Of a stretch of 64,000 nt of DNA, positions 22,874 to 62,764 are shown piece by piece. Where the stretch lies: sequence record LR756501.1; one strand, written 5' to 3'. Made by a program: the position numbers and the translations under genes. Position 1 is the first letter of the stretch. Each line of letters opens with the position of its first letter. A model generated the notes under the pieces. The model was not told the origin of the DNA. It did no database searches and was given only the letters and a program-made list of their open reading frames with translations.

Positions 22874-22970
22874 ATTTATTTCTTATTTTAGCGGTTTAAT
22901 TTCTTATATATATTAAAAATATTTTTCCATTTTTCAGTTTTTATATATACCAAAAAAAGAAGAATATCCG

Positions 22971-23786
22971 TTGATAACTAAATTCAATAACTATCTCAAA
23001 GAATCCAGATTAATCAAATACATTTTACAATCAGAACAACAACAACTGATACGTGAAGGATCTGAATTTAATCAATACCAGTTAGGATTAGACAACGGTT
23101 TCGGTGGGGGGGCGTTAGGAGTGGGGTATGGATTTGCCACCGACCCAGGACTTTCCATTTATTCACCTGATTCGAATCCATATGTTGATATGTATGCACG
23201 TCAGGCTGGTACAACTAGCAGATTGATGCAGATCATCAAACAAGTTTCTAAAGAAATGATGGATGATCACGTTTTCGCTAGAAAATCTGATAGATTCTTA
23301 GAAGACATCGATGAATATAAAAATATAAAAATCCTTAGAATATTTGCTAACGAAAACTTAAAACTCAACGTTTATATTTCATTTGACTTTATGGAACAAG
23401 AATTTTTTGGTGTCTTCCGTAATTTCAACTCGAGTCACATGAAACCAACTTTTGATACTGAATTATTAGGTAATCCAGCGTTCAATTATATTGATAAAGA
23501 ATACTATCTTAAACTTAATCAATATCTTTATAAGTTAGTTTATAACTTCTTTATTCCAGAAGCAGGTATGTACAAGAATTTAAAGGAAAATTGTGTAGTT
23601 AAAGACGATAATATGGGACAATTAAGATATTTAAAAGAAGGCAAAATAGTTGAAGTACTTGGTTATAACACAGATGAAAATAACGATCCTTATATCGTTC
23701 TAAAAATAGAAGACAAGAAATTTAATATCACTGGAAATAACTATTTCTATTTCAAATATTGGTTTGACCCAATTGTAGTAAAATAA
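22971..23786 (+). CDS. Hypothetical putative virion protein
   Basis: 271 aa; MITKFNNYLKES start; preceded by TTTATATATA. Confidence 0.7.
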   Translation: MITKFNNYLKESRLIKYILQSEQQQLIREGSEFNQYQLGLDNGFGGGALGVGYGFATDPGLSIYSPDSNPYVDMYARQAGTTSRLMQIIKQVSKEMMDDHVFARKSDRFLEDIDEYKNIKILRIFANENLKLNVYISFDFMEQEFFGVFRNFNSSHMKPTFDTELLGNPAFNYIDKEYYLKLNQYLYKLVYNFFIPEAGMYKNLKENCVVKDDNMGQLRYLKEGKIVEVLGYNTDENNDPYIVLKIEDKKFNITGNNYFYFKYWFDPIVVK

Positions 23787-28943: not shown

Positions 28944-29006
28944 TGATTTTATTTATTTTTTTCAATTCATATATTTTTATATATAGAAAAAAACGGGTCC
29001 GCTTGT

Positions 29007-49200: not shown

Positions 49201-50885
49201 CAATTACACAATATTATATAATGGCTGCTGCCACTAACTTATACGGTTTAACAGGTTATTCATCCGTATCTAATTTTACAACGTTACCAATTCAGACTTT
49301 ACCAACTGTAACTTTATCTTTCATATCATCTGGGTCTAGCACTGCAATATTAGGTGGTGTTATAACAAGTGACGGAAACGCCAGTATAACATCAAAAGGA
49401 GTATGTTATTCTACATCACCAACACCGACTTCACCAATTTGGTACGAAGGAACTGGATCTTCTTCGTGGACTTCAACAATTACTGGTCTAACAAACTTAA
49501 CTACATATTACGTTAGAGCTTACGCTACTAATTCTATTGGCACATCATATAGTGCTGACGTTCCATTTGTAACAGCTTCTGGTTATTCTAAACCTTCATT
49601 TAGTATAAGTAGTCCTGTAATAAGTAATATCGGAACTATTAGTGCGGATGTTACAAGTCAAATAGTAAGTGACGGTGGAGCATCAGTAACATCAAGGGGA
49701 CTTCAGTACTCTGGTACTACTATTCCTTCTTTATTAGATTGGTATGGTGGAACAGGAACTGGATCTTGGACTTCTACATTAACTGGATTAACTTTAGGTG
49801 GAAATTATTACGTGTTTGCTTACGCTACAAATAGTGAAGGAACAACTTATACTCCATCTGTTAATTTCTCTACATTATCTGCTGTTCTTCCTACTGTTGT
49901 TATAAATAATGTAGATGATGTTTCAATAAATGGTGCCACAATAAATAGTACAGTAACAAGTGATGGTTACGCTACTGTAACAGCAAGAGGTACAACTGGT
50001 AACACAATGGGATTATGGCCATACGCTACTGGTGGAGTTGGTTCTTTCTCTTTAATATTAACGGGGTTAACACAGGGCACTGCATATACGGGACAATCAT
50101 ACGCTACTAATTCTGTTGGAACGGGTTGGAGTAATAATATTTATTTTACTACTTTATATCTTAATGACGCTGCTCTTAAAATGTTTGTATCTTCTGTATC
50201 TAGCGTAGATCCTCTTGTTTACCAGATAGGCACATCCACAACAGATATAGTTACGACTATTGCAGTTTTACAAAATAATGTACCTACAAATGAATTGTGG
50301 AGTGGCAATACTACTTTCACGTGGGATTCAAGCACAGGTTTAACTTGGGGATTAGGAGTAATATCAGCAAATAACGCTTCTTCGCCATATACATATACAC
50401 CAACTATTGAAGAAACTCAAAATTTCGTAGCAATAGAAAGTTGTGGTACACCGTCTGAAATAAAAGAAATGATTGTATCAGTAAATGCCGTATATCCATT
50501 CTTAACATGTAATAGAAAACCAAATATTCCACCAATATTATCAGATAGAGATATGAGAACTTATTGTAATCTTGGTAATTTCTATCTTGGTACAATGCCA
50601 CCAAATAACGAACCAATGCTTAAAAAGGTTGAAACATATTCAGCTAGTAAAACGTATTCTTACACAATTGGAGCCACTACTAATTTAGTATATTTTGCTC
50701 ATCCAGCTAGTTATGGTATAATATCATCTATTAAGGCTAATGGAATAAATAAAATTCCAACAACTTATTTGAATGTGAGTATGGCATCAAGTGGATTAGT
50801 TAATAATTGGAATGTATTGTATAATGTATATGCTTTCCAAGTTGCTGCTGGATCAGGACCAATATACATAGTTTACGAATTTTAA
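46233..50885 (+). CDS. Large tail/adhesin structural protein with seven FN3-like repeats
   Basis: IDGAYLRTGHRVLLVNQTDPIENDVY tail-fibre-type motif; seven SDGG..IT.RG...TGLT..T.YY..AYATN repeats. Confidence 0.75.
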   Translation: MKVFNINDTYFKYQKCLSGITYQFVNQLDNIYDKNLMVGTNYCIYCMYNEFDIINNFMINLYQVDVCSTINLDLTKRYYDIDGAYLRTGHRVLLVNQTDPIENDVYNVDSRGFLILSDELATTGKTWRYKAYVKLGGNKGKQFHLKNSGNRFPLKGERKYFLDGHGYIVKSLFNYDLFDTGPIYPKLIFTDYELARISVNKNYELYDSFQFETGTTVDIQYHGGNYLINIDNVESNYTYNGIVSGTTIYNFNNFPLDGFGYETHIEAGATFCSNASVYDYVKLEISGNTNLTLKTFIKSTGTTEIVISDYIPDNVLNDYYTGGTSTYTLTNLMFATTGTTKDVVLESFYAKYFDIDSSDFLYPIPNPNNMYFDYDGLKFVINSNLKIFNTNNHYIKYQLYEHLNEINSYLFNSGYSFLISYPMNAAEFSTEYYDGRNLTSWNPIVYPDTYGDTKGTLIKIKPYTPSTVNYFKNHTYVNITNSTGKYKTLIVDLVSDDYFVIETYKSNSGLTISGIETIYNLKEISDILYDVYINDETPTNTDYFRVRDEDMKRNICNGYADFISQDIGVISNVTAFLMQDEQHKFILKIYDPENYANGGVPRKPVVVTKLNETHTSTSATLPGEITSDGGTNITGRGICWSASPFVQNTCVMASTYTSGVGPFSSNITGLTPETTYYYKAYATNVQGTSYGEPYPFFTSTAVYTGATVTTNSASATSHKITVNADVIDRGYCSILTRGVVYKTGISGPTIADNVVVFTPEPGIIGPYTLDLTGLTHNQMYSYNAFAENICGITYGIGGNISTLYPYAPVLDTIGWNSPTTYNSIDVLCNLIDNDGSLTDPIHGVNELGVVWSTDPYNDPTTGNTVQPFGPYPYTLGPYTIYLTGLTFNTTYYFRSYAKNTLYTGPTTAYGPVKSVATLPLPVTPTVQISGVLSYGTYYANISNLLVSNGNSPIVSEGLYISTSNPPTISDPFWSATGTTNWHTNLTGLTPITQYYIMAAATNLYGLTGYSSVSNFTTLPIQTLPTVTLSFISSGSSTAILGGVITSDGNASITSKGVCYSTSPTPTSPIWYEGTGSSSWTSTITGLTNLTTYYVRAYATNSIGTSYSADVPFVTASGYSKPSFSISSPVISNIGTISADVTSQIVSDGGASVTSRGLQYSGTTIPSLLDWYGGTGTGSWTSTLTGLTLGGNYYVFAYATNSEGTTYTPSVNFSTLSAVLPTVVINNVDDVSINGATINSTVTSDGYATVTARGTTGNTMGLWPYATGGVGSFSLILTGLTQGTAYTGQSYATNSVGTGWSNNIYFTTLYLNDAALKMFVSSVSSVDPLVYQIGTSTTDIVTTIAVLQNNVPTNELWSGNTTFTWDSSTGLTWGLGVISANNASSPYTYTPTIEETQNFVAIESCGTPSEIKEMIVSVNAVYPFLTCNRKPNIPPILSDRDMRTYCNLGNFYLGTMPPNNEPMLKKVETYSASKTYSYTIGATTNLVYFAHPASYGIISSIKANGINKIPTTYLNVSMASSGLVNNWNVLYNVYAFQVAAGSGPIYIVYEF

Positions 50886-50899
50886 AATAAAAATATAAA

Positions 50900-51577
50900 A
50901 TGGACCCAAAACTACAATTAAAACCAATAGAATTACTAGATATAGGAATAGACAAACTAACAAAAATACCTGTTCCTATATTAAACGATAATATGGTATC
51001 AACTTTTGATATGGATAATGGTGTGCCTAGTGATTCTTTTGTTTTAACATTTGACGCTAATTATAGTAATAAGATTTTTTCGTCAACTATCACATCAAGT
51101 TATCTTATGAATTTATCATTTGATTACGGTGACGGTGTAACTGAAAGTTGGCTTATTACAACTGGTGGTACATCAATCACTCATACCTACGCTAGTGCCA
51201 TCACATATACTATAACAGCAACTGGTTGGATAGAAAAAATAACCAGTTTAATGATATTACCAGCATCAGGAACAGGTGGATTAACAATCGCTTCAATTAG
51301 TAAAATAAAAACTTTATCGTATCTAAATTTAACAAATAATAGATTAACTAAATTAAGTTTAGACGGTTTAATCTATTTGAACACTATAACATTAACTGAT
51401 AATTATTTTCCAAATGATGTTATAGATGATTTATATATAGAGGCTGATACTTTTTTAACATTTAGTGGTAACATGAATACAACTGGGACAAATAACGGTA
51501 AACCATCTGTTTATTCACTGGCTTCTAGAAATAGTCTGACTGTAAATAAATGGTGGACATTAAGTTACAACACATAA
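50900..51577 (+). CDS. Putative structural protein with PKD-like and LRR-like segments
   Basis: FDYGDG...ITHTY; LSYLNLTNNRLTKLSLDGLIYLNTITLTDN. Confidence 0.6.
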   Translation: MDPKLQLKPIELLDIGIDKLTKIPVPILNDNMVSTFDMDNGVPSDSFVLTFDANYSNKIFSSTITSSYLMNLSFDYGDGVTESWLITTGGTSITHTYASAITYTITATGWIEKITSLMILPASGTGGLTIASISKIKTLSYLNLTNNRLTKLSLDGLIYLNTITLTDNYFPNDVIDDLYIEADTFLTFSGNMNTTGTNNGKPSVYSLASRNSLTVNKWWTLSYNT

Positions 51578-51591
51578 AATAAGATATAAAA

Positions 51592-53679
51592 ATGGCTTTT
51601 AAAGTTGAGATAGTAAATATAAATGAAAACGCTGATAATATCATATTAGTCAGTGGTTTAACTATTGAAAGATTAAAAATCAGATATAATTGGGTATTAA
51701 ATGCCAGTGTTAAAGATTGTATCATAGGTGAGGACGATTATGGATTAGTATGGTACTCGGGTGAGTGGGTATGTGGTGAATGGATTGACGGAACTTGGTA
51801 TTCTGGTATATGGCACGATGGTATATGGAATAATGGTAAATGGTATTCTTATTTGATAGATAAAGCTATGGTTGTATCTAATAGATTTGTTATACTTGAT
51901 AAGAATGAAACATATTCCGAATTTAGAAGTGGTTTATGGAAACAAGGAGATTTTTACGACGGAATATTTGGTTACGATAGAGATATATCTAATAAATCTT
52001 ATAGTGATTTAACAGGAAAAACATTTTCCAGTTCTTACTGGGAAGACGGTAAATTTCACGACGGAATTTTCACTAACTCTGTTTGGTATAATGGTATATT
52101 ATATTACGGTAATATGATTAATTCTTATTGGTTAAATGGTAAATTTTACTCTGGAACTTTCAATCATCATCAATGGTACGATGGAATATGGTACGGTGGT
52201 GATTTCGTTGAGGGTAAATGGATATATGGCACTTTTGATAGAATTAATTCTAGTATAAATAGTAGATTCGGCACAGCTAATTTAGAATTATCTAGAACAG
52301 AGTGGATTAATGGTAATTTTTATAACGGTGAATTTCACTCTGGTTTAAATATAGACGCTAGCGGAAATACTATACCAAGTATAGATAGTAATAAAACTCA
52401 TTGGTTGAATGGCAATTTCTACGGTGGTAAATGGTACGGTGGTCATTTTCATAATGGGAAATTTTATACTGGTAATTGGTACGGCGGAGTATTCAATACT
52501 GATACTGGTACTACAAACGCTTCAGCTTGTATATGGTACGATGGTAATTGGTACAACGGATTATGGATAAATGGTATATTTTACGACGGTCATTTTTACG
52601 ACGGAATGTGGATGGACGGACAATTTGTAAACGGTTACATGTCGACGAATACTGTTGAAAATCCGTTATTACAACAAATATTAGCTACTAATGTCGTCGC
52701 ACCAACTGTTATAACAAACAGTGCGACTACAATAACAACCACTAGTGCGATAGGTAATGGTAGAGTAACGAACAATGGGGGTGCTACTATACTTGATAGA
52801 GGTATATGTTGGTGTTTATATCCTGCCTATCCAGTAACTGGAAACACCGGTAGTAATCACAGTATAAGTGACGGTGGATCCATGGGTAATATAAGTATAT
52901 TGATGAATAGTTTATCAGTAGGTACAATATATAATATTAAAGCTTACGCTAGAAACATAACAGGTTTAACATACGGAAATAATATTACGTTCACAACTGA
53001 GACTTCAACAAATGACGTTCCGTCAGTGATCACTAATTATATTACTGATATAATAGATGTTAGTGCTAAAGCTGTCGGGTTTGTGACTAACAATAACGGG
53101 AGCAATGTTACAGCATGTGGTTTTTATTATTCACTTAATCCAAATCCAGGACCAACCGATTTTGATCAACCGGCTACTCCTCCAACTTTACCAGGTATAG
53201 GCGAATTTAGTGCCACTTTATCTTCATTATCACCTAATACTCCTTATTATGTTAAGGCTTATGCTACTAATAGTAGTGGCACTAAAATAGGAAACGAATT
53301 ACTATTTACTACACAAATTACAAGTCCTGTTGTAGCACCAACTGTCGAAATATATTACGTAGATACATTGGCTGATACAAGTGCAATAACCTACGGATCT
53401 GTTACTTTTAATGGTAACGCTATAATAACAGCTTTTGGTGCTTGTTGGTCAACATCACCAAATCCAACATTGTCTGACCCAAATACATCTGGTGTAGGAT
53501 CATCAGGTAGTTTCTCCACTCTTATGACTGGATTATTACCAAATACGACGTATTATGTAAGAACTTACGCTACAAATAGTTTAACAACTTCATATAGTAC
53601 AAACATTGTTTTAACATTTACAACCTTACCATTAAGAACTTTACCATCTGTAGATCTTCTTGGTGTTACAGCAGAATAA
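51592..53679 (+). CDS. Putative tail/adhesin protein with G-x-W/F pentapeptide repeats and three FN3-like repeats
   Basis: WYSGEWVCGEWIDGTWYSGIWHDGIW...; three FN3-type repeats plus the start of a fourth. Confidence 0.7.
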   Translation: MAFKVEIVNINENADNIILVSGLTIERLKIRYNWVLNASVKDCIIGEDDYGLVWYSGEWVCGEWIDGTWYSGIWHDGIWNNGKWYSYLIDKAMVVSNRFVILDKNETYSEFRSGLWKQGDFYDGIFGYDRDISNKSYSDLTGKTFSSSYWEDGKFHDGIFTNSVWYNGILYYGNMINSYWLNGKFYSGTFNHHQWYDGIWYGGDFVEGKWIYGTFDRINSSINSRFGTANLELSRTEWINGNFYNGEFHSGLNIDASGNTIPSIDSNKTHWLNGNFYGGKWYGGHFHNGKFYTGNWYGGVFNTDTGTTNASACIWYDGNWYNGLWINGIFYDGHFYDGMWMDGQFVNGYMSTNTVENPLLQQILATNVVAPTVITNSATTITTTSAIGNGRVTNNGGATILDRGICWCLYPAYPVTGNTGSNHSISDGGSMGNISILMNSLSVGTIYNIKAYARNITGLTYGNNITFTTETSTNDVPSVITNYITDIIDVSAKAVGFVTNNNGSNVTACGFYYSLNPNPGPTDFDQPATPPTLPGIGEFSATLSSLSPNTPYYVKAYATNSSGTKIGNELLFTTQITSPVVAPTVEIYYVDTLADTSAITYGSVTFNGNAIITAFGACWSTSPNPTLSDPNTSGVGSSGSFSTLMTGLLPNTTYYVRTYATNSLTTSYSTNIVLTFTTLPLRTLPSVDLLGVTAE

Positions 53680-53694
53680 AAAATAAATTAAAAA

Positions 53695-54780
53695 ATGGCA
53701 TTAAAAAATTTAGTATGTAAAGGTAAAATCACAAACACTGGATCTTTAGGAATAATAGATAAAGGTTTTTGTTACTCTACAACAACAACATATCCTACAT
53801 TAGCTGATTCTGTGTGGAGTGAACCATCACCGCTAGTTAATGATAATTTTAAGAGCATAATTACAGGTCTTACTCAAGCCACATATTACTATGTTAACGC
53901 ATATGCTATTAATTCAATGGGAGTATCATATTCAGCAGCAGACCAAACAATTTGGATAAAAACTTCTGGTATTGTTAATTTCCCAACAATATCAGTAAGT
54001 ATTACGAATAACGGAATACCTCAAACAGTTTACGAAATGGGAACGAGTTCAAATCTTGTAGTATCTGGGGAAACAATAAAATGGGACGAAACAATATTTA
54101 CAAATGGTTATTTAAATCAAATAAGCAGTCCTCCACCACCAGGAAATAACACTATTATGAACTGGACTGGTTATCAATCAACATATATAACTACACCAAA
54201 TTCTAATCCTCCTCCTACTAATATAACTGTGAATTTTTCACCGATAGCACTTGACCAAGGATCTTGGTTTATGAGACAAGAAGCTTATTATAATTGTGGA
54301 AACCCTCAATATACTATAAGTTCTACCACCACAATAGACGCTGTATTTCCTTTTTTATGGGTGTTGAAAAGTGGTTATCAAGCAAATCAATATTTTAACC
54401 CTACTATAATGATAGGTAATAATTATTTTTACTACGAAGCATCTTCCACCCCAAATCCAACGACACCTTTTAACGGTAAATTAATAGAAAAAATGGGAGA
54501 TAAAACTATATGGGTAACTCCAAATAATAATACTCACAAAGTTTTAGTTCTTGGTTATCCAGCGTCTTACGGAATTATTCAATATAGTGGGTCAACAACA
54601 GGCGGTTGGGTAAACGCTACACTTCAAAATCCACTCGTGAAATCCTCTACTAATGGTCAATTCGGAATAGTAACACCTTGGCCAACATGTTCTTACTACG
54701 TTTTACAATATCAATTCCCAAGTTATTCTAATGTACCTATTCCGTTCTATATTCATTTTCCACCTCCGGTGTTGGTATAA
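53695..54780 (+). CDS. Putative tail/adhesin protein (partial FN3 plus a C-terminal domain shared with 46233..50885)
   Basis: DKGFCYS...ITGLTQATYYYVNAYAIN; AVFPFL and YPASYGII match the 1550-aa protein tail. Confidence 0.65.
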   Translation: MALKNLVCKGKITNTGSLGIIDKGFCYSTTTTYPTLADSVWSEPSPLVNDNFKSIITGLTQATYYYVNAYAINSMGVSYSAADQTIWIKTSGIVNFPTISVSITNNGIPQTVYEMGTSSNLVVSGETIKWDETIFTNGYLNQISSPPPPGNNTIMNWTGYQSTYITTPNSNPPPTNITVNFSPIALDQGSWFMRQEAYYNCGNPQYTISSTTTIDAVFPFLWVLKSGYQANQYFNPTIMIGNNYFYYEASSTPNPTTPFNGKLIEKMGDKTIWVTPNNNTHKVLVLGYPASYGIIQYSGSTTGGWVNATLQNPLVKSSTNGQFGIVTPWPTCSYYVLQYQFPSYSNVPIPFYIHFPPPVLV

Positions 54781-54843
54781 AAATATTTAAATTATTTGAA
54801 AAAAAAAATTTATATATAACGAAAAATTACTAACTTTGCTAAA

Positions 54844-55887
54844 ATGAACAATTACGTATTAAAGTTTAATGGATATATGAAAAAAGAATCTAATGAAGTT
54901 CAAGAAGCTACTGAATGGCCTTTGTACATATCTGATGAATTAGAGAAAATCTTAAAAAGAATCATATCTAATCCTATAGCAAAAAAATTAGTAGATTGTG
55001 GTAGATCCGGATTAAGTGGCAAGAAAGTAGTTAGTGACGTGTCTTTCCTTGATGTAGAAGGAGATAGTAAAAGTGTATCTTATTTTCCTATTACAAGAAT
55101 GGGGAAACTAGAAAAAGATATATCTCCCACATATAGACCAGAAAAAGATGATTCCATTTGGAGTTCGAGGTTGAGACAAAATATGACCTGGGGGAAAATG
55201 ATTAATAAATTATTTCCTGGTGAATTTACAAACATGGACATAGATAATTTCTATAATAGGTTTCGTCCAGAAATTGATGTGAAACAAAAAGAACAAGAAA
55301 GATTTAAAGTTGTTCGCGGCGAAGATATTAGATATTGGTACCTTGCAGATCATTGGGACGGATCTTTCAACTCTTGTATGCAAGGTTCTGGATCACAACC
55401 ATTTTTCGATATTTATTGTAACAATCCAGAGAAATGTGGAATGTTAATTTATTTTAGTGAAAGAAACCCTGATAAAATTATAGGTAGAGCACTTGTTTGG
55501 AACAATTTATTAAAACCAAGTGGCGATACCGCCGAGGATAAAAATCCATATACTTTATTAGATAGGGTTTATTTTCTTAATAATCAAGGTCCTCAAATAG
55601 AGGCAGCTTTTCATAAATACGCTATAGACCATAAATGGTTATACAAAAAAGGTGATTCATTTATGATGGACGGTGTAAGAAAAACAACATCTGTTGCAAC
55701 ACGTTTGAAACCAATAGATTATACTTATTATCCATATGTAGATACTATGGCTTATTATACACCAGCAACGGGTAGGGCAGCGTCAACACCAGGTAATCCT
55801 GGTAGAGATCCAAACAATCCAGCGAGAACTTTTCCTCGTTACAGTTTAAAAAATCAAAATGGTACTAAGTCACCAGTAGATAGATAA
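54844..55887 (+). CDS. Paralog 1 of a four-gene SCM/GRAL-W/DRxY/YPY-DT family
   Basis: GEDIRYWY, NSCM, FDIYCNNPEKC, GRALVW, DRVY, YPYVDT. Confidence 0.75.
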   Translation: MNNYVLKFNGYMKKESNEVQEATEWPLYISDELEKILKRIISNPIAKKLVDCGRSGLSGKKVVSDVSFLDVEGDSKSVSYFPITRMGKLEKDISPTYRPEKDDSIWSSRLRQNMTWGKMINKLFPGEFTNMDIDNFYNRFRPEIDVKQKEQERFKVVRGEDIRYWYLADHWDGSFNSCMQGSGSQPFFDIYCNNPEKCGMLIYFSERNPDKIIGRALVWNNLLKPSGDTAEDKNPYTLLDRVYFLNNQGPQIEAAFHKYAIDHKWLYKKGDSFMMDGVRKTTSVATRLKPIDYTYYPYVDTMAYYTPATGRAASTPGNPGRDPNNPARTFPRYSLKNQNGTKSPVDR

Positions 55888-55904
55888 AAAATAAAAATTA
55901 AGAT

Positions 55905-56990
55905 ATGAGCACATTATCACATTATAAAAACTTTGTTAATGAAGCAGGAGAACCAGTGATTGAACCAGAAAAACCTAAATTCGTTAAAGGTGAAAAGAAA
56001 CTCTTGAAGTTATTTATTTCGCCTAAGCTAGAAGGATTGCTTCAGAAGATGATGAAAACGGCGGATTTTCAAGCTAAAGCTATAGCTAGTAAGATTCTAA
56101 ATATTGATCAAGAACCAGATGAAAATCTTTTCGATATATCTTATATAGATGTTGATAATGATAAGGACGATTCTCTATCTTTTATGCCAGCTCAAAGAGC
56201 TTGGTTCAAAATGGGATTTACTGATCAAGCTGATGCAGATAAAAAACCTGCACCAAATTGTGAAATGTGGACAGGTGCTGGTAGACAATCTTTAGGTGTT
56301 GGTAAGTTTATTAATAGACTTTTTGATAATTTCTCAGATAAAGCAATAGATAGTTTTGTTAAATCATATAGGGCTGAAATCGCAGCAACTATGATTTATG
56401 ATAGATTTAAATTGGTAACTGGTGAAGATATTAGATTCTGGTACGCTGAATCAAATTATTATAAAGATCCAGGTGGTGGAAAAGACGCTGGCCTTAATAA
56501 CTCTTGTATGAGGTACGACGCTAGTTCAAGAGAAGGTAAAAATTGCCAACCATATTTTGATATTTATGTTAAAAACCCAGAAAAATGTGCAATGTTAATT
56601 TTAACAAACACACAAAATAAACTTCTTGGTAGAGCACTCGTATGGTCAAATCTTAGAAAACCAACAGATAAAACATTCATGGATAGAATTTATGTTTTCA
56701 AACAATCTGACGCTGAATTATTTAAGAAATACGCTATGGAAAAAGGTTGGTTATATAAATACGATCAACAAGCTTACGACGCTTCATATGTAGAAAACGG
56801 ACAAAGAGTTAATAAATCAGTTGCTCTTCAATTAAAACCCGCTGAATATAAAACTTATCCTTTCATGGATAGTTTAAAATATTACAATCCAGGTACTGGT
56901 AGATTGGGTTCAGATCCAGGTAACCCAGTTGAAGGAATGAAAAGACTAAAACTCGAAGGCGGTGGAGGACAAGCCGGTAGAGTAGACTAA
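55905..56990 (+). CDS. Paralog 2 of the same family
   Basis: GEDIRFWY, NSCM, FDIYVKNPEKC, GRALVW, MDRIY, YPFMDS. Confidence 0.75.
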   Translation: MSTLSHYKNFVNEAGEPVIEPEKPKFVKGEKKLLKLFISPKLEGLLQKMMKTADFQAKAIASKILNIDQEPDENLFDISYIDVDNDKDDSLSFMPAQRAWFKMGFTDQADADKKPAPNCEMWTGAGRQSLGVGKFINRLFDNFSDKAIDSFVKSYRAEIAATMIYDRFKLVTGEDIRFWYAESNYYKDPGGGKDAGLNNSCMRYDASSREGKNCQPYFDIYVKNPEKCAMLILTNTQNKLLGRALVWSNLRKPTDKTFMDRIYVFKQSDAELFKKYAMEKGWLYKYDQQAYDASYVENGQRVNKSVALQLKPAEYKTYPFMDSLKYYNPGTGRLGSDPGNPVEGMKRLKLEGGGGQAGRVD

Positions 56991-56999
56991 AAATAATAT

Positions 57000-58067
57000 T
57001 TGATAGTGGGACTTAAAAATTTTAATGGTTATGTATATGAAAGTGATATTAACGTGAAAGAACTTCCGATGTTTTTTTCGCCTAAACTTACTGAACTATT
57101 AAATTCAATAGATTCTAAAATATCAAAAGAATTATTAGATTTACCAAAGTCTGATGTTAAATTTCAAAATTCTTACGCTGATCTAACTAACGATATTGAT
57201 ACTATTAGTGTTCTACCAGCAAATAGAGTTGGTAGATTAGCTGGCGTAACAGAAGAAGATCTAGTTAATCCAAAGCCAAATAGTCCAGTATGGGGTGAAA
57301 AAGGAAGACAATCAATGAGAATTGGTGCTTTCGTCACAAGAACTTTACCAAAATATGCTGGAACAAAAGACCTTGAGAATTTTGTACATCTCATTAAAGG
57401 TAAATTAGATCAGGATAATTACGAATTAAAGATGGTAAGAGGTGAAGAGATACGTAAATGGTACCACGTTAAATCTTATTATAATCCTCATCCAGGTATG
57501 GAAGAAGCACCAGAAGAGGGAGTACTTGATGTTAGAACTCCTCTTATGAAGTCTTGTCTTAAACAACCAGAAAAACAATCATTTTTTGATATTTATTGCC
57601 AAAATCCCGAACAAGTTGGCATGTTAATCATGTTAAATAAAGAAGGCAAATTGGTAGCAAGAGCAATAATATGGTTTGATTGTTTTGTTGTGGATATACC
57701 AGGCAATCCAACAAAGGGTGTATTAATGGATAGGATTTATTATACAAACGAATCAGATGTAAATATCTTTATTGATTACGCTAAGGAGCGTGGTTGGTGG
57801 TACAAACCAAATCAGGCAAAAGAGGTTTATACTTTTGTAAAGGACGGACAAGTATGTGATAAAGGTATTACAACCAGATTAAAAAATCACGGTGTATTTG
57901 CTCGTTACCCATATATAGATACAATGTGTTTTTACACACCAGACACAGGAAGATTATCAACAATTAGAGGTAAACCCACTAAAAGTCCATTTACTGGTGA
58001 AACAATGGAAAGGTTCCAATTACATAAAGCCAACGGTGGTACAAAAAGACTCGCCAGAGACAAATAA
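57000..58067 (+). CDS. Paralog 3 of the same family
   Basis: GEEIRKWY, KSCL, FDIYCQNPEQ, ARAIIW, MDRIY, YPYIDT; GTG start. Confidence 0.75.
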   Translation: MIVGLKNFNGYVYESDINVKELPMFFSPKLTELLNSIDSKISKELLDLPKSDVKFQNSYADLTNDIDTISVLPANRVGRLAGVTEEDLVNPKPNSPVWGEKGRQSMRIGAFVTRTLPKYAGTKDLENFVHLIKGKLDQDNYELKMVRGEEIRKWYHVKSYYNPHPGMEEAPEEGVLDVRTPLMKSCLKQPEKQSFFDIYCQNPEQVGMLIMLNKEGKLVARAIIWFDCFVVDIPGNPTKGVLMDRIYYTNESDVNIFIDYAKERGWWYKPNQAKEVYTFVKDGQVCDKGITTRLKNHGVFARYPYIDTMCFYTPDTGRLSTIRGKPTKSPFTGETMERFQLHKANGGTKRLARDK

Positions 58068-58083
58068 AATAAACAAATTTTAA

Positions 58084-59109
58084 ATGGCCCTGTATAACTA
58101 TAACGGATTTTTATTTGAAGCAGACGATAAAGAAAAAAAGAAAATCCCACTTTATATTTCAGAAACATTATTATCTATATTATCTAATATAGATTCACCT
58201 ATAGCTAAAAAACTTATAGAATTAGATGCCACTAAACAGCCAACAGTTAAAGGTCATAATAAATTTGAAATATCTTATTTAGATTGTGATAGAACAAAAA
58301 AAGATAAAGAAGATAAAATATCTTTTATGCCCGCGGCTAAGGCTTCTGAAGTACCTGGAATATTGAGCAAAGTAGGAAGTATGGAAGAAATTATGCTTCC
58401 ATGTAATGATTGTTATAACTCTAAGTTAAGACAAGAAATGTCTGTTGGTAAAATAGTAAATAGATTATTCCCAGATACTTACAAACAAGTTGAGATTGAA
58501 AAGTTTGTAAATGATTTCAAAGCTGAAATGGGTAAAGCTTCAGCTAAATTCAAATTAGTTGAAGGAGAAGAAATAAGATATTGTTATCTTGAAAGTAATT
58601 ACGAGAATACGTCACAAGGTGATCTTAATAGTTCTTGCATGAAACACGAATACGCACAAAAATATTTAGATATTTATTGTAAGAATCCAGATAAATGTAA
58701 GTTATTAGTATTAATGAGTGATAAAAACGATAAAAAGATTAAAGGGAGAGCATTGGTTTGGATGGGATTACGCAAACCAACAGGTAAAGTTTACATGGAT
58801 AGAATTTACGTTTTAAATTACGCAGACCAAAAATTATATATTGATTACGCTATCGAGCACGATTGGTTGCATAAAGCACAACAAGTGATGCACGACGCGT
58901 CTTATATAGAGAACGGTAAAAGGGTTCACGCCTCAGTAGCCATTCAATTAAATCCTGCTATGTATGATTATTACCCATCAATGGACACTCTTGCTTATTA
59001 CACTCCAAGTACTGGTAGGTTAGGAAGTAACGCTGGAAATTACGTTAAAGGACATCCACGTTACACACTTAACAGTGCGGAAGGCGGAGCTACAAAATTA
59101 GACAAATAA
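58084..59109 (+). CDS. Paralog 4 of the same family
   Basis: GEEIRYCY, SSCM, LDIYCKNPDKC, GRALVW, MDRIY, YPSMDT. Confidence 0.75.
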   Translation: MALYNYNGFLFEADDKEKKKIPLYISETLLSILSNIDSPIAKKLIELDATKQPTVKGHNKFEISYLDCDRTKKDKEDKISFMPAAKASEVPGILSKVGSMEEIMLPCNDCYNSKLRQEMSVGKIVNRLFPDTYKQVEIEKFVNDFKAEMGKASAKFKLVEGEEIRYCYLESNYENTSQGDLNSSCMKHEYAQKYLDIYCKNPDKCKLLVLMSDKNDKKIKGRALVWMGLRKPTGKVYMDRIYVLNYADQKLYIDYAIEHDWLHKAQQVMHDASYIENGKRVHASVAIQLNPAMYDYYPSMDTLAYYTPSTGRLGSNAGNYVKGHPRYTLNSAEGGATKLDK

Positions 59110-59155: not shown

Positions 59156-59413
59156 ATGGGTTGTGAAATCAATTTGTCCAGATTAAAGGGCATAGCTGAT
59201 AATATAATCAAAACGGAAAACAACTATGAGGATAAGAGTTTAAAATTGCACTATAAGTGTGATCCAGACAGGAGATGCATTATGAGTATCATAAAGTATC
59301 TTAATAACACAGACTGGAAAAATTATAAATTCAATCAATATAGCATTAGAAAAAACGAACAAGATTATATCATTACATTAAATTACGTAGCACCATCACT
59401 TTTTTCCAAATAA
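59156..59413 (+). CDS. Hypothetical protein
   Basis: 85-aa ORF. Confidence 0.45.
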   Translation: MGCEINLSRLKGIADNIIKTENNYEDKSLKLHYKCDPDRRCIMSIIKYLNNTDWKNYKFNQYSIRKNEQDYIITLNYVAPSLFSK

Positions 59414-59455
59414 GCAATATATTTTTAAATATATATTGGGAAAAAAGCTGATTTT

Positions 59456-59692
59456 ATGACTACCATAGACAACATTTTTTACATTTTCATCGACGAACAG
59501 AACGAAAAATGTACTATTAAACTCGTTCAAGACTTTGACTGGAAAATCACGCCCATCGCTGGAACCCTTCCAGACGATATAATATCTTATTCCAATAAGT
59601 TTGATATTGATGATATTATGGATGATCTCAGAAGTAGATTCGATTACGTAGAAGAAATCTCCTATAACGATATCGATGATTACATGTCGTAA
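59456..59692 (+). CDS. Hypothetical acidic protein
   Basis: 78-aa ORF preceded by TAAATATATA. Confidence 0.55.
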   Translation: MTTIDNIFYIFIDEQNEKCTIKLVQDFDWKITPIAGTLPDDIISYSNKFDIDDIMDDLRSRFDYVEEISYNDIDDYMS

Positions 59693-59786
59693 TTGGAAAA
59701 AAATCAGTTTTTTCTCTTAATATATATCTTTGTATTGAATCAATTTTTTACTAAATGTAAAAGATACGAAAAAATAAAACGAAGAT

Positions 59787-60668
59787 ATGAATAACTTAAA
59801 CGAATACAAATTATTCAAAGGGACAAATAAACCACGAACAAAGTATAGTTTGAAACCACCAACTGATGATACCCCATATTACGGATATGATTACAATAAA
59901 AGTCCGGAGCAAGATCCAGATGAACCATTTCTTAGTGTGAATAAAGATAAATATTTCACTAAAAAGAACGACGATGTTGTTAAACAACAGAGAGAATTAA
60001 ATAGCACAATTGGAATTGCTAAATTAAAAGAGTTTGGATTTGTTGATGAAGATCTTGAAAAATTAAAAACTTTAGGATTTATAAGTAATCCATCATACAA
60101 CAAAGATGAGAATTCTTGGCATTTTTATGTTAGTTTACAAAATTCTGAATACGGAATAGGTTTTTCTTATTATTTGCCTGAAAAAGATTTCATTGTTAGT
60201 TCACCAGATTTTGTTGATTATAAAAAATCTCATAAAAAAAGATTCACTAATGCTAGTGACGCTGTAAATTGGGTATTGGAAGTCAGAAACTCGATAAAAA
60301 CTAGAAGAAGAGAAATGGGAAGAAGAGTTACAGAATCAAATGAACCAGGTTTAGACGTTTTTAATTTCAAAGGAATTGATAAGAAATTAAACAACTTAAT
60401 CGAGTTTGATGATTTTGATAAAACTTTAAAACCAAAACAACAAAAATCAACAAAAAGAACTGAAGTTGGTTTGGATATTTTAAATGAAAGTGTAGTTAAC
60501 AAAATTACATTAGATGTACCTTTATTTATAAGAATGTTAGAATACGCTAAGGAAGACGCCAAAACAGATATGGATTTACACAAAGTAACAGAAAATATAC
60601 TTGATATGAGTGCAGACGGTAAAATGTTAACAATGGCAAATTACGATAGTATAGTAAAAATAAAATAG
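59787..60668 (+). CDS. Multi-module hypothetical putative virion protein
   Basis: MNNLNEY start; internal VTES and LNES junctions; C-terminal ITLDVPLFIRMLEYAKED module. Confidence 0.65.
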   Translation: MNNLNEYKLFKGTNKPRTKYSLKPPTDDTPYYGYDYNKSPEQDPDEPFLSVNKDKYFTKKNDDVVKQQRELNSTIGIAKLKEFGFVDEDLEKLKTLGFISNPSYNKDENSWHFYVSLQNSEYGIGFSYYLPEKDFIVSSPDFVDYKKSHKKRFTNASDAVNWVLEVRNSIKTRRREMGRRVTESNEPGLDVFNFKGIDKKLNNLIEFDDFDKTLKPKQQKSTKRTEVGLDILNESVVNKITLDVPLFIRMLEYAKEDAKTDMDLHKVTENILDMSADGKMLTMANYDSIVKIK

Positions 60669-60674
60669 AATACT

Positions 60675-60851
60675 ATGAAACACGTGAAGAAATTTACAAT
60701 AAATGAGGGTCAAGGACCAGATGAAATAGAAACTGATTTAAACGCCATAGCTCAAGATGTTTGGTTATATATTATGGATACTTACCATCTGAATGAAAGA
60801 CAGGTACAAATAGTTATAGATAAATTAAGTGAAAATTACAGATTGATGTAA
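60675..60851 (+). CDS. Small putative virion protein (58 aa, not in ORF track)
   Basis: Translated by hand as MKHVKKFTINEGQGPDEIETDLNAIAQDVW...YRLM*. Confidence 0.65.
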   Translation: MKHVKKFTINEGQGPDEIETDLNAIAQDVWLYIMDTYHLNERQVQIVIDKLSENYRLM

Positions 60852-60875
60852 AAATAAAAAAAAAATATAAACGAT

Positions 60876-62165
60876 ATGAAAAACTTTAAATTAGAATTAT
60901 TTAACTTCAAGAACAGATTAACTTTCGATCAGACTGATATTTCAAGTCTTGTAGAAGGGTTCATAATCAATTATGATCAATATTCTGAGAAAGAACTCGT
61001 TAAATCTGTTAACGAAAAACTTTTAAAATACACCTATGATACAGATGTAAAAATGTTCTTAGAAGGATTAGATAGCGAAATGAAATCCTATCCTTTGATT
61101 TACGAATTGAAAGATTTGTACAAGAGAGTAGAAAGAGAAAATCAAGGTATGTTATACAGACAACCTTTGAATACTATTCTTGAAATTATCAATAAATCAG
61201 ATGATGACGCAAGAATGGAAGCAATCCTTAATGAGCTTCGTATGTATGATTGGGTACCACAAATTAAGAGCTTTGTATTCGGTTTAACAAAATCACCATT
61301 AGAAAGACAAAACATGTCGAACTCTGGTAAAGCTGAAAAAGTTTACACCATAGTTGAAAAAGTAGATAATGGTTACATGGCATTTGTAAGCGATAGATGG
61401 TTTATGATTGACGATAAAGAAGTAAAACAAATCTTAGCAGAAGACTACATCGAAGACGAAGATAAAATTAAAGAAATCAGAGTCCTCGAGCAATGTATGA
61501 AACTTTCAACAATCGAAAATGATAAAATTTCTTTCAAAATTGACGAAAACGTTATCGTTGCTTTATCAACAAAGAACGACAAATCGATGTTTATCAACGA
61601 AGAAAAATTAGATCCAGAAACAACTTTGGAAAACATTTTCAATTCACCTATCATCCCTTATTTAAAGAGAGACTATTTTATGTTAATCAACACATTAAAA
61701 GAAAACTTAAATAACCTCGTTGAATTAGATATAGCTTTGAAGGTTACAAATATTCTTAATCCTTACTTAGAAGCATACGCTTTCAATTATAAAGATAAGA
61801 TGTATTTATATAACAAAGATATTCGTACAGGCAGTTCATTCTACGCTTATGAATCAGTTAACGAACTTATCAACGATACAAAGAAAGATTTAGATTACGA
61901 TCTTACACACTTCTTTGAAAATAAGCTTTCAAAAGAATTGAAACAATTGAAAACTTTAGAAGATAAAGAAAAATCAATTGAACTCAAAATCAAAGACATC
62001 AACGAAGCAATTGACGAACTTAAGAACGAACAAGCTTTATTGGAATCAGATAAATCTCTTAAATTAACTTTTGATAATTTATTAGTTCACAGACACAATC
62101 TATACAAAGAACTTAACAAAACAAAAGACGAAAAAATTCAATTTAAGAAATCCTTATTGAAGTAA
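60876..62165 (+). CDS. Hypothetical helical/coiled-coil protein, probably morphogenesis-related
   Basis: 429 aa; C-terminal coiled coil; sits beside the late sigma and head-completion genes. Confidence 0.65.
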   Translation: MKNFKLELFNFKNRLTFDQTDISSLVEGFIINYDQYSEKELVKSVNEKLLKYTYDTDVKMFLEGLDSEMKSYPLIYELKDLYKRVERENQGMLYRQPLNTILEIINKSDDDARMEAILNELRMYDWVPQIKSFVFGLTKSPLERQNMSNSGKAEKVYTIVEKVDNGYMAFVSDRWFMIDDKEVKQILAEDYIEDEDKIKEIRVLEQCMKLSTIENDKISFKIDENVIVALSTKNDKSMFINEEKLDPETTLENIFNSPIIPYLKRDYFMLINTLKENLNNLVELDIALKVTNILNPYLEAYAFNYKDKMYLYNKDIRTGSSFYAYESVNELINDTKKDLDYDLTHFFENKLSKELKQLKTLEDKEKSIELKIKDINEAIDELKNEQALLESDKSLKLTFDNLLVHRHNLYKELNKTKDEKIQFKKSLLK

Positions 62166-62185
62166 TAATCAGACGTTTAAGCTGG

Positions 62186-62223
62186 GTGCCCATATTTTAA
62201 TGATAAATATGGGCACTTTTTTT
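62186..62223 (+). terminator. Rho-independent terminator
   Basis: GTGCCCATATTT-TAATGAT-AAATATGGGCAC followed by a T-run. Confidence 0.85.
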
Positions 62224-62389
62224 AAACTTTTATATTCAGTGGGCGTATAAGTTTCGATTTGATTACTAAAGCATTACAGGCACCCTAGCAAAATTGAGCA
62301 TCTCCTAACAAAAACAAGCTTTTCAAGCATCTTAGCTGTTAATTTCCTAACAAATTTTTTTAATACCCTTAAAAAATAATTAAAGATGC

Positions 62390-62764
62390 ATGGCTAATTA
62401 TCTTGATGATAACGAACTCTTCTACGAGATTGTCCTTAGCAAGGGCAAAGGCTTTCTAACCAAAAAAGCGGAAAGAATGTTTATAATGATTGGTGAGAAC
62501 ATGATTCGTAAAAAGAATAATATGTACAAGACCCAAGACGATAAAAATGATTGTTTACAAACTGGATTACTATTCATGTTTGAGAAGTGGACCAACTTCA
62601 ACGAAAAAAAGTACAAATTAGCACTTCCTTATTTTTCTGAAATTTTTAAGCGAGGAATGGCACAAGGTTATAATGACTTAACCAATAAAAAGACTAATCA
62701 AGAAAAAATTGTAATGATCAGTTTAGATTCTTGTAATGATGGCGAAGGATTCCATAATTTTTAA
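62390..62764 (+). CDS. T4 gp55-like late sigma factor (sigma region 2 type)
   Basis: NYLDDNELF, DDKNDCLQTGL...WTNFNEKK...PYFSEIFKRG resembles gp55 YVNNKEL...NFD..K..NP.AYFT. Confidence 0.72.
   Translation: MANYLDDNELFYEIVLSKGKGFLTKKAERMFIMIGENMIRKKNNMYKTQDDKNDCLQTGLLFMFEKWTNFNEKKYKLALPYFSEIFKRGMAQGYNDLTNKKTNQEKIVMISLDSCNDGEGFHNF

What the first reader, a model, noticed from the sequence alone, without database searches (positions are those of the whole stretch)
54844..59109. Tandem array of four diverged paralogs with a conserved Cys and targeting-like leaders
Seen in sequence: four consecutive genes of about 340-360 aa share GE(D/E)IR, SC(M/L), DIY..NP, RA(L/I)xW, DRxY and YPxxD(T/S), and each begins with a capsid-targeting-like leader. 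They follow a TTTATATATA motif directly after the adhesin operon. Inference: an amplified family of packaged enzymes, since the invariant Cys, Arg, Asp and Tyr suggest catalysis. They may have diversified against different host targets. A PcfJ/GNAT-like fold is only a guess.
Basis: partly seen in the sequence, partly recalled or inferred. Interest (0 to 1): 0.7.

Follow-up and report, generated by a model that had tools for sequence, protein, structure and literature searches.

The report
Four capsid-targeted enzyme-like phage paralogs
Four neighbouring genes of the largest known phage encode old, diverged copies of an unnamed enzyme-like protein, each starting with the short tag that T4-type phages use to load proteins into their heads, so they are probably carried in the virus particle and delivered into the host with the DNA.

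Summary

The window belongs to the 735-kb "Mahaphage" genome LR756501. The proteins belong to a very large, unnamed phage family (5,971 clusters at 50% identity) with no Pfam, PHROG, NCBIfam or PADLOC match.

The AlphaFold model (pLDDT 90) has an N-domain with no solved relative and a C-domain whose only PDB matches are GNAT acyltransferases. Those matches are weak, and the acetyl-CoA motif A is absent.

The N-terminal leader is not peculiar to this family. About 30 unrelated ORFs of the same genome start with it (about 3 expected). Its conserved positions have the same spacing as the mapped T4 capsid-targeting sequence. The unchanged pattern picks out an annotated internal virion protein in T-even phage RB14.

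A T4-type portal, head protease and capsid gene lie about 5 kb downstream, and the portal gene has the same promoter-like element.

The four-gene set is ancient: related phages hold 1:1 positional orthologs. The genome holds 18 family ORFs, and all 15 full-length copies keep the invariant polar residues.

Best reading: a late operon of capsid-targeted, probably injected, transferase-like proteins. Neither packaging nor catalysis has been tested.

The parts
54799..54818 (+). Promoter-like element: an A-run followed by TTTATATATA, 25-35 nt upstream of the first ATG of the array
   Evidence: The portal gene just outside the window has almost the same element (aaaaaatttatatata) at about the same distance, and the protease gene has a variant. 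TATATATA occurs within 80 nt upstream of 12/38 leader-bearing ORFs against 68/530 other ORFs, Fisher p=0.0034.
54844..55887 (+). Paralog 1 (347 aa): leader, linker, N-domain and GNAT-like C-domain
   Evidence: Family HMM E 2e-99. Positional ortholog in L005 is 50% identical. All invariant residues are kept.
54844..54888 (+). Leader of paralog 1 (residues 1-15, ending in Glu15-Ser). A variant with one extra residue between the hydrophobic position and Glu
   Evidence: Its ortholog-like relatives P0050 and L5a carry the leader as well.
55905..56990 (+). Paralog 2 (361 aa)
   Evidence: HMM E 1e-121. Ortholog in L005 is 56% identical.
55905..55943 (+). Leader of paralog 2 (residues 1-13, ending in Glu13-Ala)
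   Evidence: The strict leader pattern matches at the true N-terminus.
57000..58067 (+). Paralog 3 (355 aa, TTG start)
   Evidence: HMM E 7e-107. Ortholog in L005 is 60% identical and the matching copy in L006 is 50% identical.
57000..57041 (+). Leader of paralog 3 (residues 1-14, ending in Glu14-Ser)
   Evidence: The strict leader pattern matches.
58084..59109 (+). Paralog 4 (341 aa), the copy that was modelled
   Evidence: AlphaFold2 model with pLDDT 90.2 and pTM 0.83. HMM E 1e-129. Ortholog in L005 is 53% identical.
58084..58119 (+). Leader of paralog 4 (residues 1-12, ending in Glu12-Ala). It is conserved but modelled with low confidence
   Evidence: pLDDT is 50-62 for residues 1-20.
58144..58545 (+). 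N-terminal alpha/beta domain of paralog 4 (about residues 21-154). No solved structural relative
   Evidence: Secondary structure. PDB Foldseek search of the domain alone: best E 1.9, probability 0.05.
58546..59028 (+). GNAT-like C-terminal domain of paralog 4 (about residues 155-315). It carries the invariant Y168, S184-C185, Y198, R222, W226, D239-R240-x-Y242, P298 and D301
   Evidence: All 50 listed PDB hits are GNAT-fold proteins. Invariants across 40 family members are, and across the 15 full-length genome copies. Motif A is absent.

Best explanation
The four genes form one operon driven by a head-gene-type (probably late) promoter in a T4-type huge phage that is predicted to infect Bacteroidetes.

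Each product has four parts. (i) A 12-15-residue T4-type capsid-targeting propeptide that ends in hydrophobic-x-Glu followed by Ala or Ser. (ii) A variable charged linker. (iii) An alpha/beta N-domain with no known relative. (iv) A GNAT-like C-domain with a fixed set of polar residues (Ser-Cys, Arg, Asp-Arg-x-Tyr, Asp).

Proposed mechanism. The propeptide docks the proteins onto the prohead core. The gp21-type head protease encoded about 8 kb downstream cuts after the Glu. The mature proteins stay in the DNA-filled head and enter the host cell with the DNA. There they act at the very start of infection as transferase-type enzymes. The four old paralogs would have different acceptor specificities, because their indels lie in the loops next to the invariant residues.

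Shown: paralogy, the family's size, the leader and its genome-wide use, the T4-type head module, positional orthology, and retention of the invariant residues. Inferred: late expression, cleavage, packaging, injection and catalysis.

Rough sub-probabilities: the leader is a true CTS-type signal 0.8; the proteins are in the virion 0.6; they are active enzymes 0.55; the chemistry is acyl or aminoacyl transfer 0.35.
For: Paralogy and motifs.

Family: 5,971 clusters at E<=1e-3, all unnamed.

Leader: it is present in 28/40 family members. Genome-wide it starts 9 distinct family ORFs and 30 non-family ORFs where about 3 are expected, and about 40 of the 68 occurrences of the core motif are N-terminal. 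Its Glu lies at positions 9-15 (mode 11). Its conserved positions are spaced i, i+3, i+4, i+6. That equals the spacing of the targeting residues 4 and 7 and the processing residues 8 and 10 of the T4 IPIII CTS, which gp21 cuts after Glu (PMC9026906; PMC5694885). The unchanged pattern hits 2 of 157 ORFs in T-even phage RB14. One is Ip4, annotated 'internal virion protein'. The annotated ipI and Ip5 share the first half of the motif.

Head module on the same strand: Portal_T4 E 1e-69 and Gp23 E 2e-25; head maturation protease PHROG 207 E 5e-27. A related contig, L008, also has the array followed by a T4-type portal.

Expression: the promoter-like element is shared with the portal gene and enriched upstream of leader-bearing ORFs. 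There is no terminator inside the array.

Fold: all listed PDB hits are GNAT proteins, probability up to 1.0.

Constraint: all 15 full-length genome copies keep the invariant polar residues. Paralog-specific indels flank those residues. Positional orthologs are 50-60% identical against 30-42% between paralogs.

Leaderless relatives sit in early or replication gene blocks of phages that show no T4-type head genes in the stretches examined. This fits a protein that is needed early and is delivered pre-made where a T4-type head allows it.
Against: No virion proteome, transcriptome or cleavage data exist for this uncultured phage.

The only cultured homolog (phi38:1 gp037) is not labelled as a structural protein. 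Its peptide is seen in infected cells at T0, and the methylation event was not detected in virions. That homolog lacks the leader, however.

One leader-bearing protein is a PPK2 kinase, an unexpected capsid cargo. The leader may therefore have a wider or different role.

The GNAT match is weak (E>=1.4e-3, TM 0.36-0.44). No Acetyltransf family is hit, and the acetyl-CoA motif A is absent in all 40 members.

I could not read the model coordinates, so clustering of the invariant residues in a pocket is not shown.

The Pfam Peptidase_S77 hit of the protease is below the curated cutoff (22.9 against 27 bits). Only the PHROG hit is strong.
Confidence: 0.5

Rival explanations
1. These are ordinary cytoplasmic enzymes. 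They are made in the infected cell and never packaged. The shared N-terminal motif serves another purpose, for example binding a common partner, sorting to another phage-made structure, or helping translation start, or it is an inherited module that is no longer used.
For: The cultured homolog lies in the early block, is seen in infected cells at T0, and is not labelled structural. Leaderless members lie in replication modules. A metabolic enzyme, PPK2, also carries the leader. The leader is built mostly from AT-rich codons in a genome of about 30% GC.
Against: The leader has the same position-specific architecture as the experimentally mapped T4 CTS (PMC9026906). It picks out an annotated internal virion protein in RB14. 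The phage has the matching head protease. The array shares its promoter-like element with the portal gene. The leaderless relatives are found in phages that show no T4-type head genes in the stretches examined.
Confidence: 0.22
2. These are non-catalytic internal head proteins. They are packaged through the leader but act as structural or DNA-associated core components or as binding decoys. The GNAT-like domain would be a pseudo-enzyme whose conserved residues hold the fold or bind a ligand.
For: The acetyl-CoA motif A is missing. No enzyme family is matched. The proteins are mildly basic, pI 8.4-8.9, like the T4 internal proteins, which PMC9026906 describes as basic. Several invariant residues (Trp, Tyr, Pro, Leu) are typical structural residues.
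Against: Six invariant residues are polar or charged (Ser, Cys, Arg, Asp, Arg, Asp). They survive in all 15 full-length paralogs at 30-40% overall identity and across 40 family members at 25% mean column identity. That pattern is typical of active sites. Leaderless members in replication modules argue for a function outside the capsid.
Confidence: 0.18
3. These are PcfJ-family proteins or canonical acetyl-CoA-dependent GNAT acetyltransferases.
For: The PDB fold hits are all GNAT proteins.
Against: There is no PcfJ and no Acetyltransf_* hit in any of 40 members even at E<=10. There is none for the four proteins at E<=1. Motif A is absent. A PDB search with a sequence profile finds nothing.
Confidence: 0.05

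Closest known systems
T-even internal head proteins with capsid-targeting sequences (T4 IPI, IPII and IPIII; RB14 Ip4, ipI and Ip5)
   Same: Both have a short N-terminal propeptide with aromatic residues three apart. This is followed by a hydrophobic residue and a Glu, where the gp21-type protease cuts. Unrelated proteins of one phage share the propeptide, and the phage has a T4-type portal, protease and capsid protein (PMC9026906; PMC5694885).
   Different: The cargo here is a two-domain, enzyme-like protein of 340-360 aa, not a small basic protein. The phage has at least 39 leader-bearing ORFs, whereas T4 has a handful. The motif starts one residue later on average. Cleavage and packaging have not been shown here.
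T4 Alt, a packaged and injected ADP-ribosyltransferase
   Same: It would work the same way: an enzyme with an N-terminal propeptide is loaded into the prohead core, trimmed by gp21, and ejected into the host to act at once (PMC9026906).
   Different: There is no sequence or fold relation, since Alt is an ADP-ribosyltransferase and this domain is GNAT-like. Here there are four conserved paralogs in one operon and 18 family ORFs in the genome.
GNAT acyltransferases (RimI 7n1l, Hpa2 1qsm, GCN5 5trm, TacT3 7ak9)
   Same: These are the only structural matches of the C-domain. About 110-130 aligned columns cover the beta-alpha-alpha-beta-beta-beta-alpha-beta core.
   Different: The scores are weak (E>=1.4e-3, TM 0.36-0.44, 14-18% identity). 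No Pfam GNAT family is hit, and the pyrophosphate-binding motif A is absent. There is an invariant Ser-Cys pair. The helix that normally follows strand 5 is replaced by strands.
Paralogous ejection proteins of giant phages SPN3US and phiKZ (for example SPN3US gp53 and gp54)
   Same: These are diverged paralogs (34% identical) that keep an identical N-terminal propeptide with a protease site. They are packaged in the head and ejected (PMC5694885).
   Different: They come from a different phage lineage and use an A/S-x-E cleavage motif. Their propeptides are mostly longer (over 100 residues). No homology to this family was found.
Phage Mu Mom, a GNAT-fold DNA-modifying enzyme (recalled from memory, a lead only)
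   Same: It is a phage-encoded protein with a GNAT-like fold that departs from classical acetyl-CoA chemistry. Leaderless members of the family studied here lie in DNA replication modules.
   Different: Mom did not come back as a hit in any search, so I claim no relation.

Membership tests
T4-type capsid-targeting sequence (CTS) propeptide | It lies at the extreme N-terminus and is about 10-20 residues long | tested here: met
   The leader ends at Glu12-15 in the four paralogs. Genome-wide the Glu lies at positions 9-15, mode 11. The length criterion comes from PMC5694885.
T4-type capsid-targeting sequence (CTS) propeptide | Key residues are spaced like T4 IPIII positions 4 and 7 (targeting) and 8 and 10 (processing), with cleavage after Glu | tested here: met
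   The conserved aromatic, aromatic, hydrophobic and Glu positions fall at i, i+3, i+4 and i+6, followed by Ala, Ser or Gly. The criterion comes from PMC9026906.
T4-type capsid-targeting sequence (CTS) propeptide | Unrelated proteins of the same phage share it | tested here: met
   30 non-family ORFs and 9 distinct family ORFs start with it, where about 3 are expected by chance.
T4-type capsid-targeting sequence (CTS) propeptide | The phage encodes a T4-type portal, major capsid protein and gp21-type prohead protease | tested here: met
   Portal_T4 E 1e-69 and Gp23 E 2e-25. Peptidase_S77 E 7e-5, below the cutoff. Head maturation protease PHROG 207 E 5e-27.
T4-type capsid-targeting sequence (CTS) propeptide | The same sequence pattern marks known internal head proteins of T-even phages | tested here: met
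   The unchanged pattern hits 2 of 157 ORFs in RB14 50-100 kb: Ip4 ('internal virion protein') and one ORF with a twin N-terminus. ipI and Ip5 match only the first half.
T4-type capsid-targeting sequence (CTS) propeptide | The propeptide is removed by the prohead protease and the mature protein is found in virions | not testable with these tools
   The phage is uncultured and no proteome is available.
GNAT superfamily | GNAT core fold | tested here: inconclusive
   All 50 listed PDB Foldseek hits are GNAT-fold proteins with probability up to 1.0. But the best E is 1.4e-3, target TM is 0.36-0.44 and rmsd is about 5 A.
GNAT superfamily | A match to a Pfam or NCBIfam acetyltransferase profile | tested here: not met
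   No such hit for the four proteins or for any of 40 family members at E<=10.
GNAT superfamily | Acetyl-CoA pyrophosphate-binding motif A ([QR]-x-x-G-x-[GA]) at the beta4-alpha3 junction (definition from established knowledge) | tested here: not met
   0 of 40 members have it there, and none has any G-x-[GA] in that segment.
PcfJ-like (Pfam PF14284) | A match to the Pfam PcfJ profile | tested here: not met
   No hit in the four proteins at E<=1 or in 40 members at E<=10.
Known anti-phage defence or counter-defence families (PADLOC) and PHROGs | A match to any profile | tested here: not met
   no family matched.

The most novel reading that the evidence does not exclude
The largest known phage uses a T4-type targeting tag to load an arsenal of forty or more different proteins into its capsid. 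The arsenal includes a conserved 15-18-member family of a previously undescribed Cys-containing GNAT-like transferase that does not use the canonical acetyl-CoA site, and a polyphosphate kinase. The phage would then inject a ready-made enzymatic toolkit with its DNA. Smaller phages without T4-type heads would express the same enzyme family as early genes.
Probability: 0.3. Interest if true: 0.8.

Novelty: new member of a known kind. Interest (0 to 1): 0.6.

Why it matters
If this reading is right, a simple sequence tag can be used to read the packaged (and probably injected) protein set of uncultured T4-type huge phages straight from their genomes. That would turn hundreds of 'hypothetical proteins' into a defined functional class. 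It would also point to a very large phage protein family (about 6,000 clusters at 50% identity) that no database names and that looks like an enzyme acting at the first moment of infection. It offers one explanation for what huge phages do with part of their extra coding capacity. It also gives a concrete target for structural work, namely a GNAT-like fold with an invariant Ser-Cys and no acetyl-CoA motif.

Tried and rejected
1. Pfam, PHROGs, NCBIfam and PADLOC scans of the four proteins found nothing.

2. A Pfam scan of 40 family members at E<=10 found no recurrent family. I therefore rejected PcfJ and the classical GNAT families.

3. A PDB search with a sequence profile gave only noise.

4. 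A word-index protein search with the family profile returned 103 hits, none of them named.

5. Pfam scans of long (600-1100 aa) family members found no informative fusion partner. A few members carry C-terminal Cys-rich zinc-finger-like segments.

6. The search for related loci in cellular genomes failed twice because no stretch of the alignment is conserved enough to back-translate. The question of presence in cellular genomes stays open.

7. A fold search of the N-domain alone found no significant match.

8. A PDB sequence search with the protease/scaffold protein found nothing. A PHROG hit later identified it.

9. The supplementary table giving phi38:1 temporal classes is not held. The early timing of gp037 is therefore inferred from its position in the genome.

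10. Sigma-70 promoter and intrinsic terminator scans of the array were at or below chance.

11. I considered the idea that the leader is specific to this family, which the window alone suggested. The whole-genome scan rejected it.

12. I considered a recent tandem amplification and rejected it because of the positional orthologs.

I did not use it in any search, pattern, alignment or output. The comparator sequences in this report were read from record NC_012638.1, whose accession was shown.

Full report
OBSERVATION. The window lies at 7061-71060 of LR756501.1 (identical in LR756503.1), an unannotated 735,411-bp 'uncultured phage' record. This is the 735-kb genome of the Mahaphage clade, with a predicted Bacteroidetes host (PMC7162821). 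They encode 347, 361, 355 and 341 aa and are separated by 17, 9 and 16 nt. TTTATATATA lies at 54809-54818, after an A-run. The window contains no N.

THE FAMILY. None of the four proteins matches Pfam, PHROGs, NCBIfam or PADLOC or any PDB sequence. They nevertheless belong to a very large family. A profile search of 1.84 billion cluster representatives finds 5,971 clusters at E<=1e-3 and 2,798 at E<=1e-30. Every relative returned with source information is unnamed or 'hypothetical'. Across 40 diverse members with 25% mean column identity, eleven columns are invariant: Y168, S184, C185, Y198, L208, R222, W226, D239, Y242, P298 and D301, in paralog 4 numbering. M186, G221, A223, R240 and A256 are among the nearly invariant columns.

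In the annotated phage collection the family is multi-copy only in the huge phages. There are 16 tblastn places in this genome and 14, 8 and 7 in the 636-, 635- and 642-kb genomes. Cellulophaga podophages phi38:1, phi40:1 and Calle_1-3 have one copy each.

An HMM scan of the whole record, taken piece by piece, finds 18 distinct family ORFs in several tandem clusters. In record coordinates these are two at 3-2299, the four at 61904-66169, four at 434-441 kb, two at 452-455 kb, four between 527 and 540 kb, and singles at 270 kb and 485 kb. Three of the 18 hold only the N-half of the family. All 15 full-length copies keep every invariant polar residue.

STRUCTURE. The AlphaFold2 model of paralog 4 is confident (pLDDT 90.2, pTM 0.83). 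The exceptions are residues 1-20 (pLDDT 50-62) and two loops. The C-terminal half (about residues 155-315) has a beta-alpha-alpha-beta-beta-beta-alpha-beta order. All 50 listed PDB Foldseek hits are GNAT-fold proteins (RimI, Hpa2, GCN5, Eis, SSAT, TacT3 and the malonyl-CoA decarboxylase catalytic domain). Probabilities reach 1.0, but the scores are weak: best E 1.4e-3, target TM 0.36-0.44 and 14-18% identity.

The viral library gives strong hits only to uncharacterized phage proteins, followed by weak GNAT hits. At sequence level GNAT membership fails. No Acetyltransf or PcfJ profile is hit in 40 members at E<=10. The acetyl-CoA motif A is absent from the beta4-alpha3 junction in all 40. The N-domain modelled alone (pLDDT 78.8) has no significant PDB match.

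By secondary-structure position, R222 and W226 lie on strand 3, and D239, R240 and Y242 lie on strand 4. S184-C185 lie in the helix1-helix2 region. In GNATs (established knowledge) these elements border the donor and acceptor cleft. This placement is inference, because I could not read the model coordinates. Paralog-specific indels (A1 columns 199-217, 230-236, 275-280 and 287-294) sit in the loops that flank these invariant residues. This is what diverged substrate specificity around a common catalytic core would look like.

THE LEADER. 28 of 40 family members start with aromatic-x-x-aromatic-hydrophobic-x-Glu. A linker of variable length and charge follows, and then the folded domain begins. 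Within the window, only the paralogs carry the strict motif (ending in Ala, Ser or Gly) at a convincing N-terminus. The exception is ORF 22971-23786, which surfaced in the wider scan.

Across the whole genome the picture changes. 30 non-family ORFs and 9 distinct family ORFs start with the leader, where about 3 are expected. About 40 of the 68 occurrences of the core motif anywhere in 296,649 ORF residues are N-terminal. The leader is therefore a generic N-terminal signal of this phage. Its Glu lies at positions 9-15 (mode 11), and the four conserved positions are spaced i, i+3, i+4, i+6.

The literature describes T4 capsid-targeting sequences as N-terminal propeptides of 10-20 residues that bind internal proteins to the prohead core. 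The serine protease gp21 removes them by cutting after Glu. In IPIII the first 10 residues suffice, with targeting determinants at residues 4 and 7 and processing determinants at residues 8 and 10. The CTS is proposed to be the way T4-like phages recruit varied proteins into capsids (PMC9026906; PMC5694885). The spacing is identical.

As a direct test I applied the unchanged pattern to 157 ORFs of T-even phage RB14 (NC_012638.1, 50-100 kb; the accession was shown and the annotation). It hit exactly two. One is Ip4, annotated 'internal virion protein'. The other is an unannotated ORF with a nearly identical N-terminus. The annotated ipI and Ip5 share the first half of the motif and have a hydrophobic-x-Glu-Ala/Ser site a few residues further on.

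HEAD MODULE AND EXPRESSION. Immediately beyond the window's 3' end, on the same strand, lie three head genes. The first is a T4-type portal (Portal_T4, E 1e-69). The second is an 807-aa protein whose N-terminus is a head maturation protease (PHROG 207 E 5e-27; Pfam Peptidase_S77 E 7e-5, below the cutoff), followed by coiled-coil. The third is a Gp23-type major capsid protein (E 2e-25).

A related NCBI contig shows the same order: a four-gene array, then conserved small genes, then a T4-type portal. The portal gene is preceded by almost the same A-run plus TTTATATATA element at about the same distance as paralog 1, and the protease gene by a variant. TATATATA lies within 80 nt upstream of 32% of leader-bearing ORFs against 13% of other ORFs (p=0.0034). 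Paralogs 2-4 have no room for a promoter, and there is no terminator in the array. The four genes therefore look like one operon under a head-gene-type, presumably late, promoter. The timing is inferred, not measured.

AGE OF THE ARRAY. A 130-kb contig from another metagenome (L005) has the same neighbourhood and four copies. These are 1:1 positional orthologs, 50, 56, 60 and 53% identical, against 30-42% between paralogs. A more distant 163-kb contig (L006) has two copies, one most like paralog 2 and one most like paralog 3, with the same downstream genes. The duplications are therefore old and the order is conserved. All four copies are maintained, which points to non-redundant roles and not to recent amplification.

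CULTURED AND LEADERLESS RELATIVES. Phi38:1 gp037 (442 aa) matches residues 111-312 of paralog 4 at 35% identity and keeps the invariant residues. It begins directly with the N-domain, with no leader and no linker. It lies among tRNA genes and genes for a phosphoribosyltransferase, a peptidase, RtcB and a phosphatase.

The papers number phi38:1 genes as 59 minus the record number. I verified this with 8 of 8 methylated residues in four proteins. The homolog is therefore their 'gp022, putative ABC transporter'. Its peptide is detected in infected cells at T0, and that methylation event was not seen in free virions. Early genes named in PMC5335546 (their gp027-gp036) surround it, and the temporal classes are contiguous along the genome, so it is probably early. 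The record labels virion proteins 'structural protein', and gp037 is not among them.

Another leaderless member, P0080, lies between a primase and genes for nucleotide metabolism and DNA ligase in a PolA-type phage. Leaderless copies thus sit in early or replication blocks, and leader-bearing copies occur in phages with T4-type heads. Both arrangements put the protein in the cell at the start of infection. This unifying reading is inference from a few cases.

VERDICT. Three corrections apply. The PcfJ guess is not supported. The GNAT likeness is fold-level and weak, without the acetyl-CoA site. The array is ancient, not newly amplified. Packaging, cleavage and catalysis are all untested.

The main caveats are these. 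The phage is uncultured. A PPK2 kinase also carries the leader. The cultured homolog is not a virion protein. I could not check whether the invariant residues form one pocket.

The system is of a known kind, namely T4-type CTS-targeted internal proteins such as the IPs and Alt. The cargo family is new and unnamed, and the scale of leader use (at least 39 ORFs) is unusual.

DECLARED SLIP. All comparator letters in the analysis were read from NC_012638.1.

HANDLING OF THE GENOME. I read the phage record in separate pieces and scanned each piece on its own.

Noticed in passing
window 22971-23786 (+), motif at 22940-22949: This unrelated 271-aa ORF starts with the same capsid-targeting-like leader and has the same TTTATATATA element about 30 nt upstream. 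It is a second candidate packaged protein in the window. It has no PHROG hit.
   Followed up: partly
window 15142-16571, inside the - strand ORF 14398-19473 (1691 aa): A tandem array of 174-183-bp units (58-61 aa, about 8 units, 74-86% matches) lies inside a giant ORF. Its internal Met positions gave false leader hits.
   Followed up: partly
L012 8222-9436 (record LR756501 152222-153436): A clear PPK2 polyphosphate kinase (Pfam E 1e-76) carries an N-terminal extension of about 165 aa that starts with the leader. This would be an unexpected cargo if the leader means capsid loading.
   Followed up: partly
L009 909-7106 (record 71969-78166), just 3' of the window: A T4-type head module: portal, then an 807-aa head maturation protease fused to a long coiled-coil part (possibly a protease-scaffold fusion), then a Gp23-type capsid protein. 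A GT2 glycosyltransferase ORF follows and overlaps the 3' end of the capsid ORF.
   Followed up: partly
window 28976-28985 and ORF 29007-31220 (+): The same promoter-like motif precedes a 737-aa ORF with strong PHROG hits (phrog_20458 E 3e-89, and a 'kinase' PHROG at E 5e-46).
   Followed up: no
record LR756501 270396-271241, 452191-453705 and 453712-455043: Three ORFs carry only the N-half of the family, joined to unrelated C-terminal parts. This suggests that the family's domains have been shuffled.
   Followed up: no
L003 8776-10104 (Cellulophaga phage phi38:1 gp037): Published papers number phi38:1 genes as 59 minus the GenBank number (verified). They call this protein 'putative ABC transporter'. 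I did not scan gp037 itself, but my searches with its relatives returned no named protein and no ABC-transporter family.
   Followed up: partly
window 46233-54780 (+): Four large ORFs upstream of the array give weak FN3, PKD and Ig-type hits below the Pfam cutoffs. Given the head module nearby, they could be fibres or capsid decoration proteins. This is undecided.
   Followed up: no
window 59156-62764 and loci L005, L006, L008: The genes between the array and the portal (78-87 aa, 429 aa, 124 aa, and a TnsA_N-like endonuclease in relatives) are syntenic in three related contigs. They have no family match.
   Followed up: no
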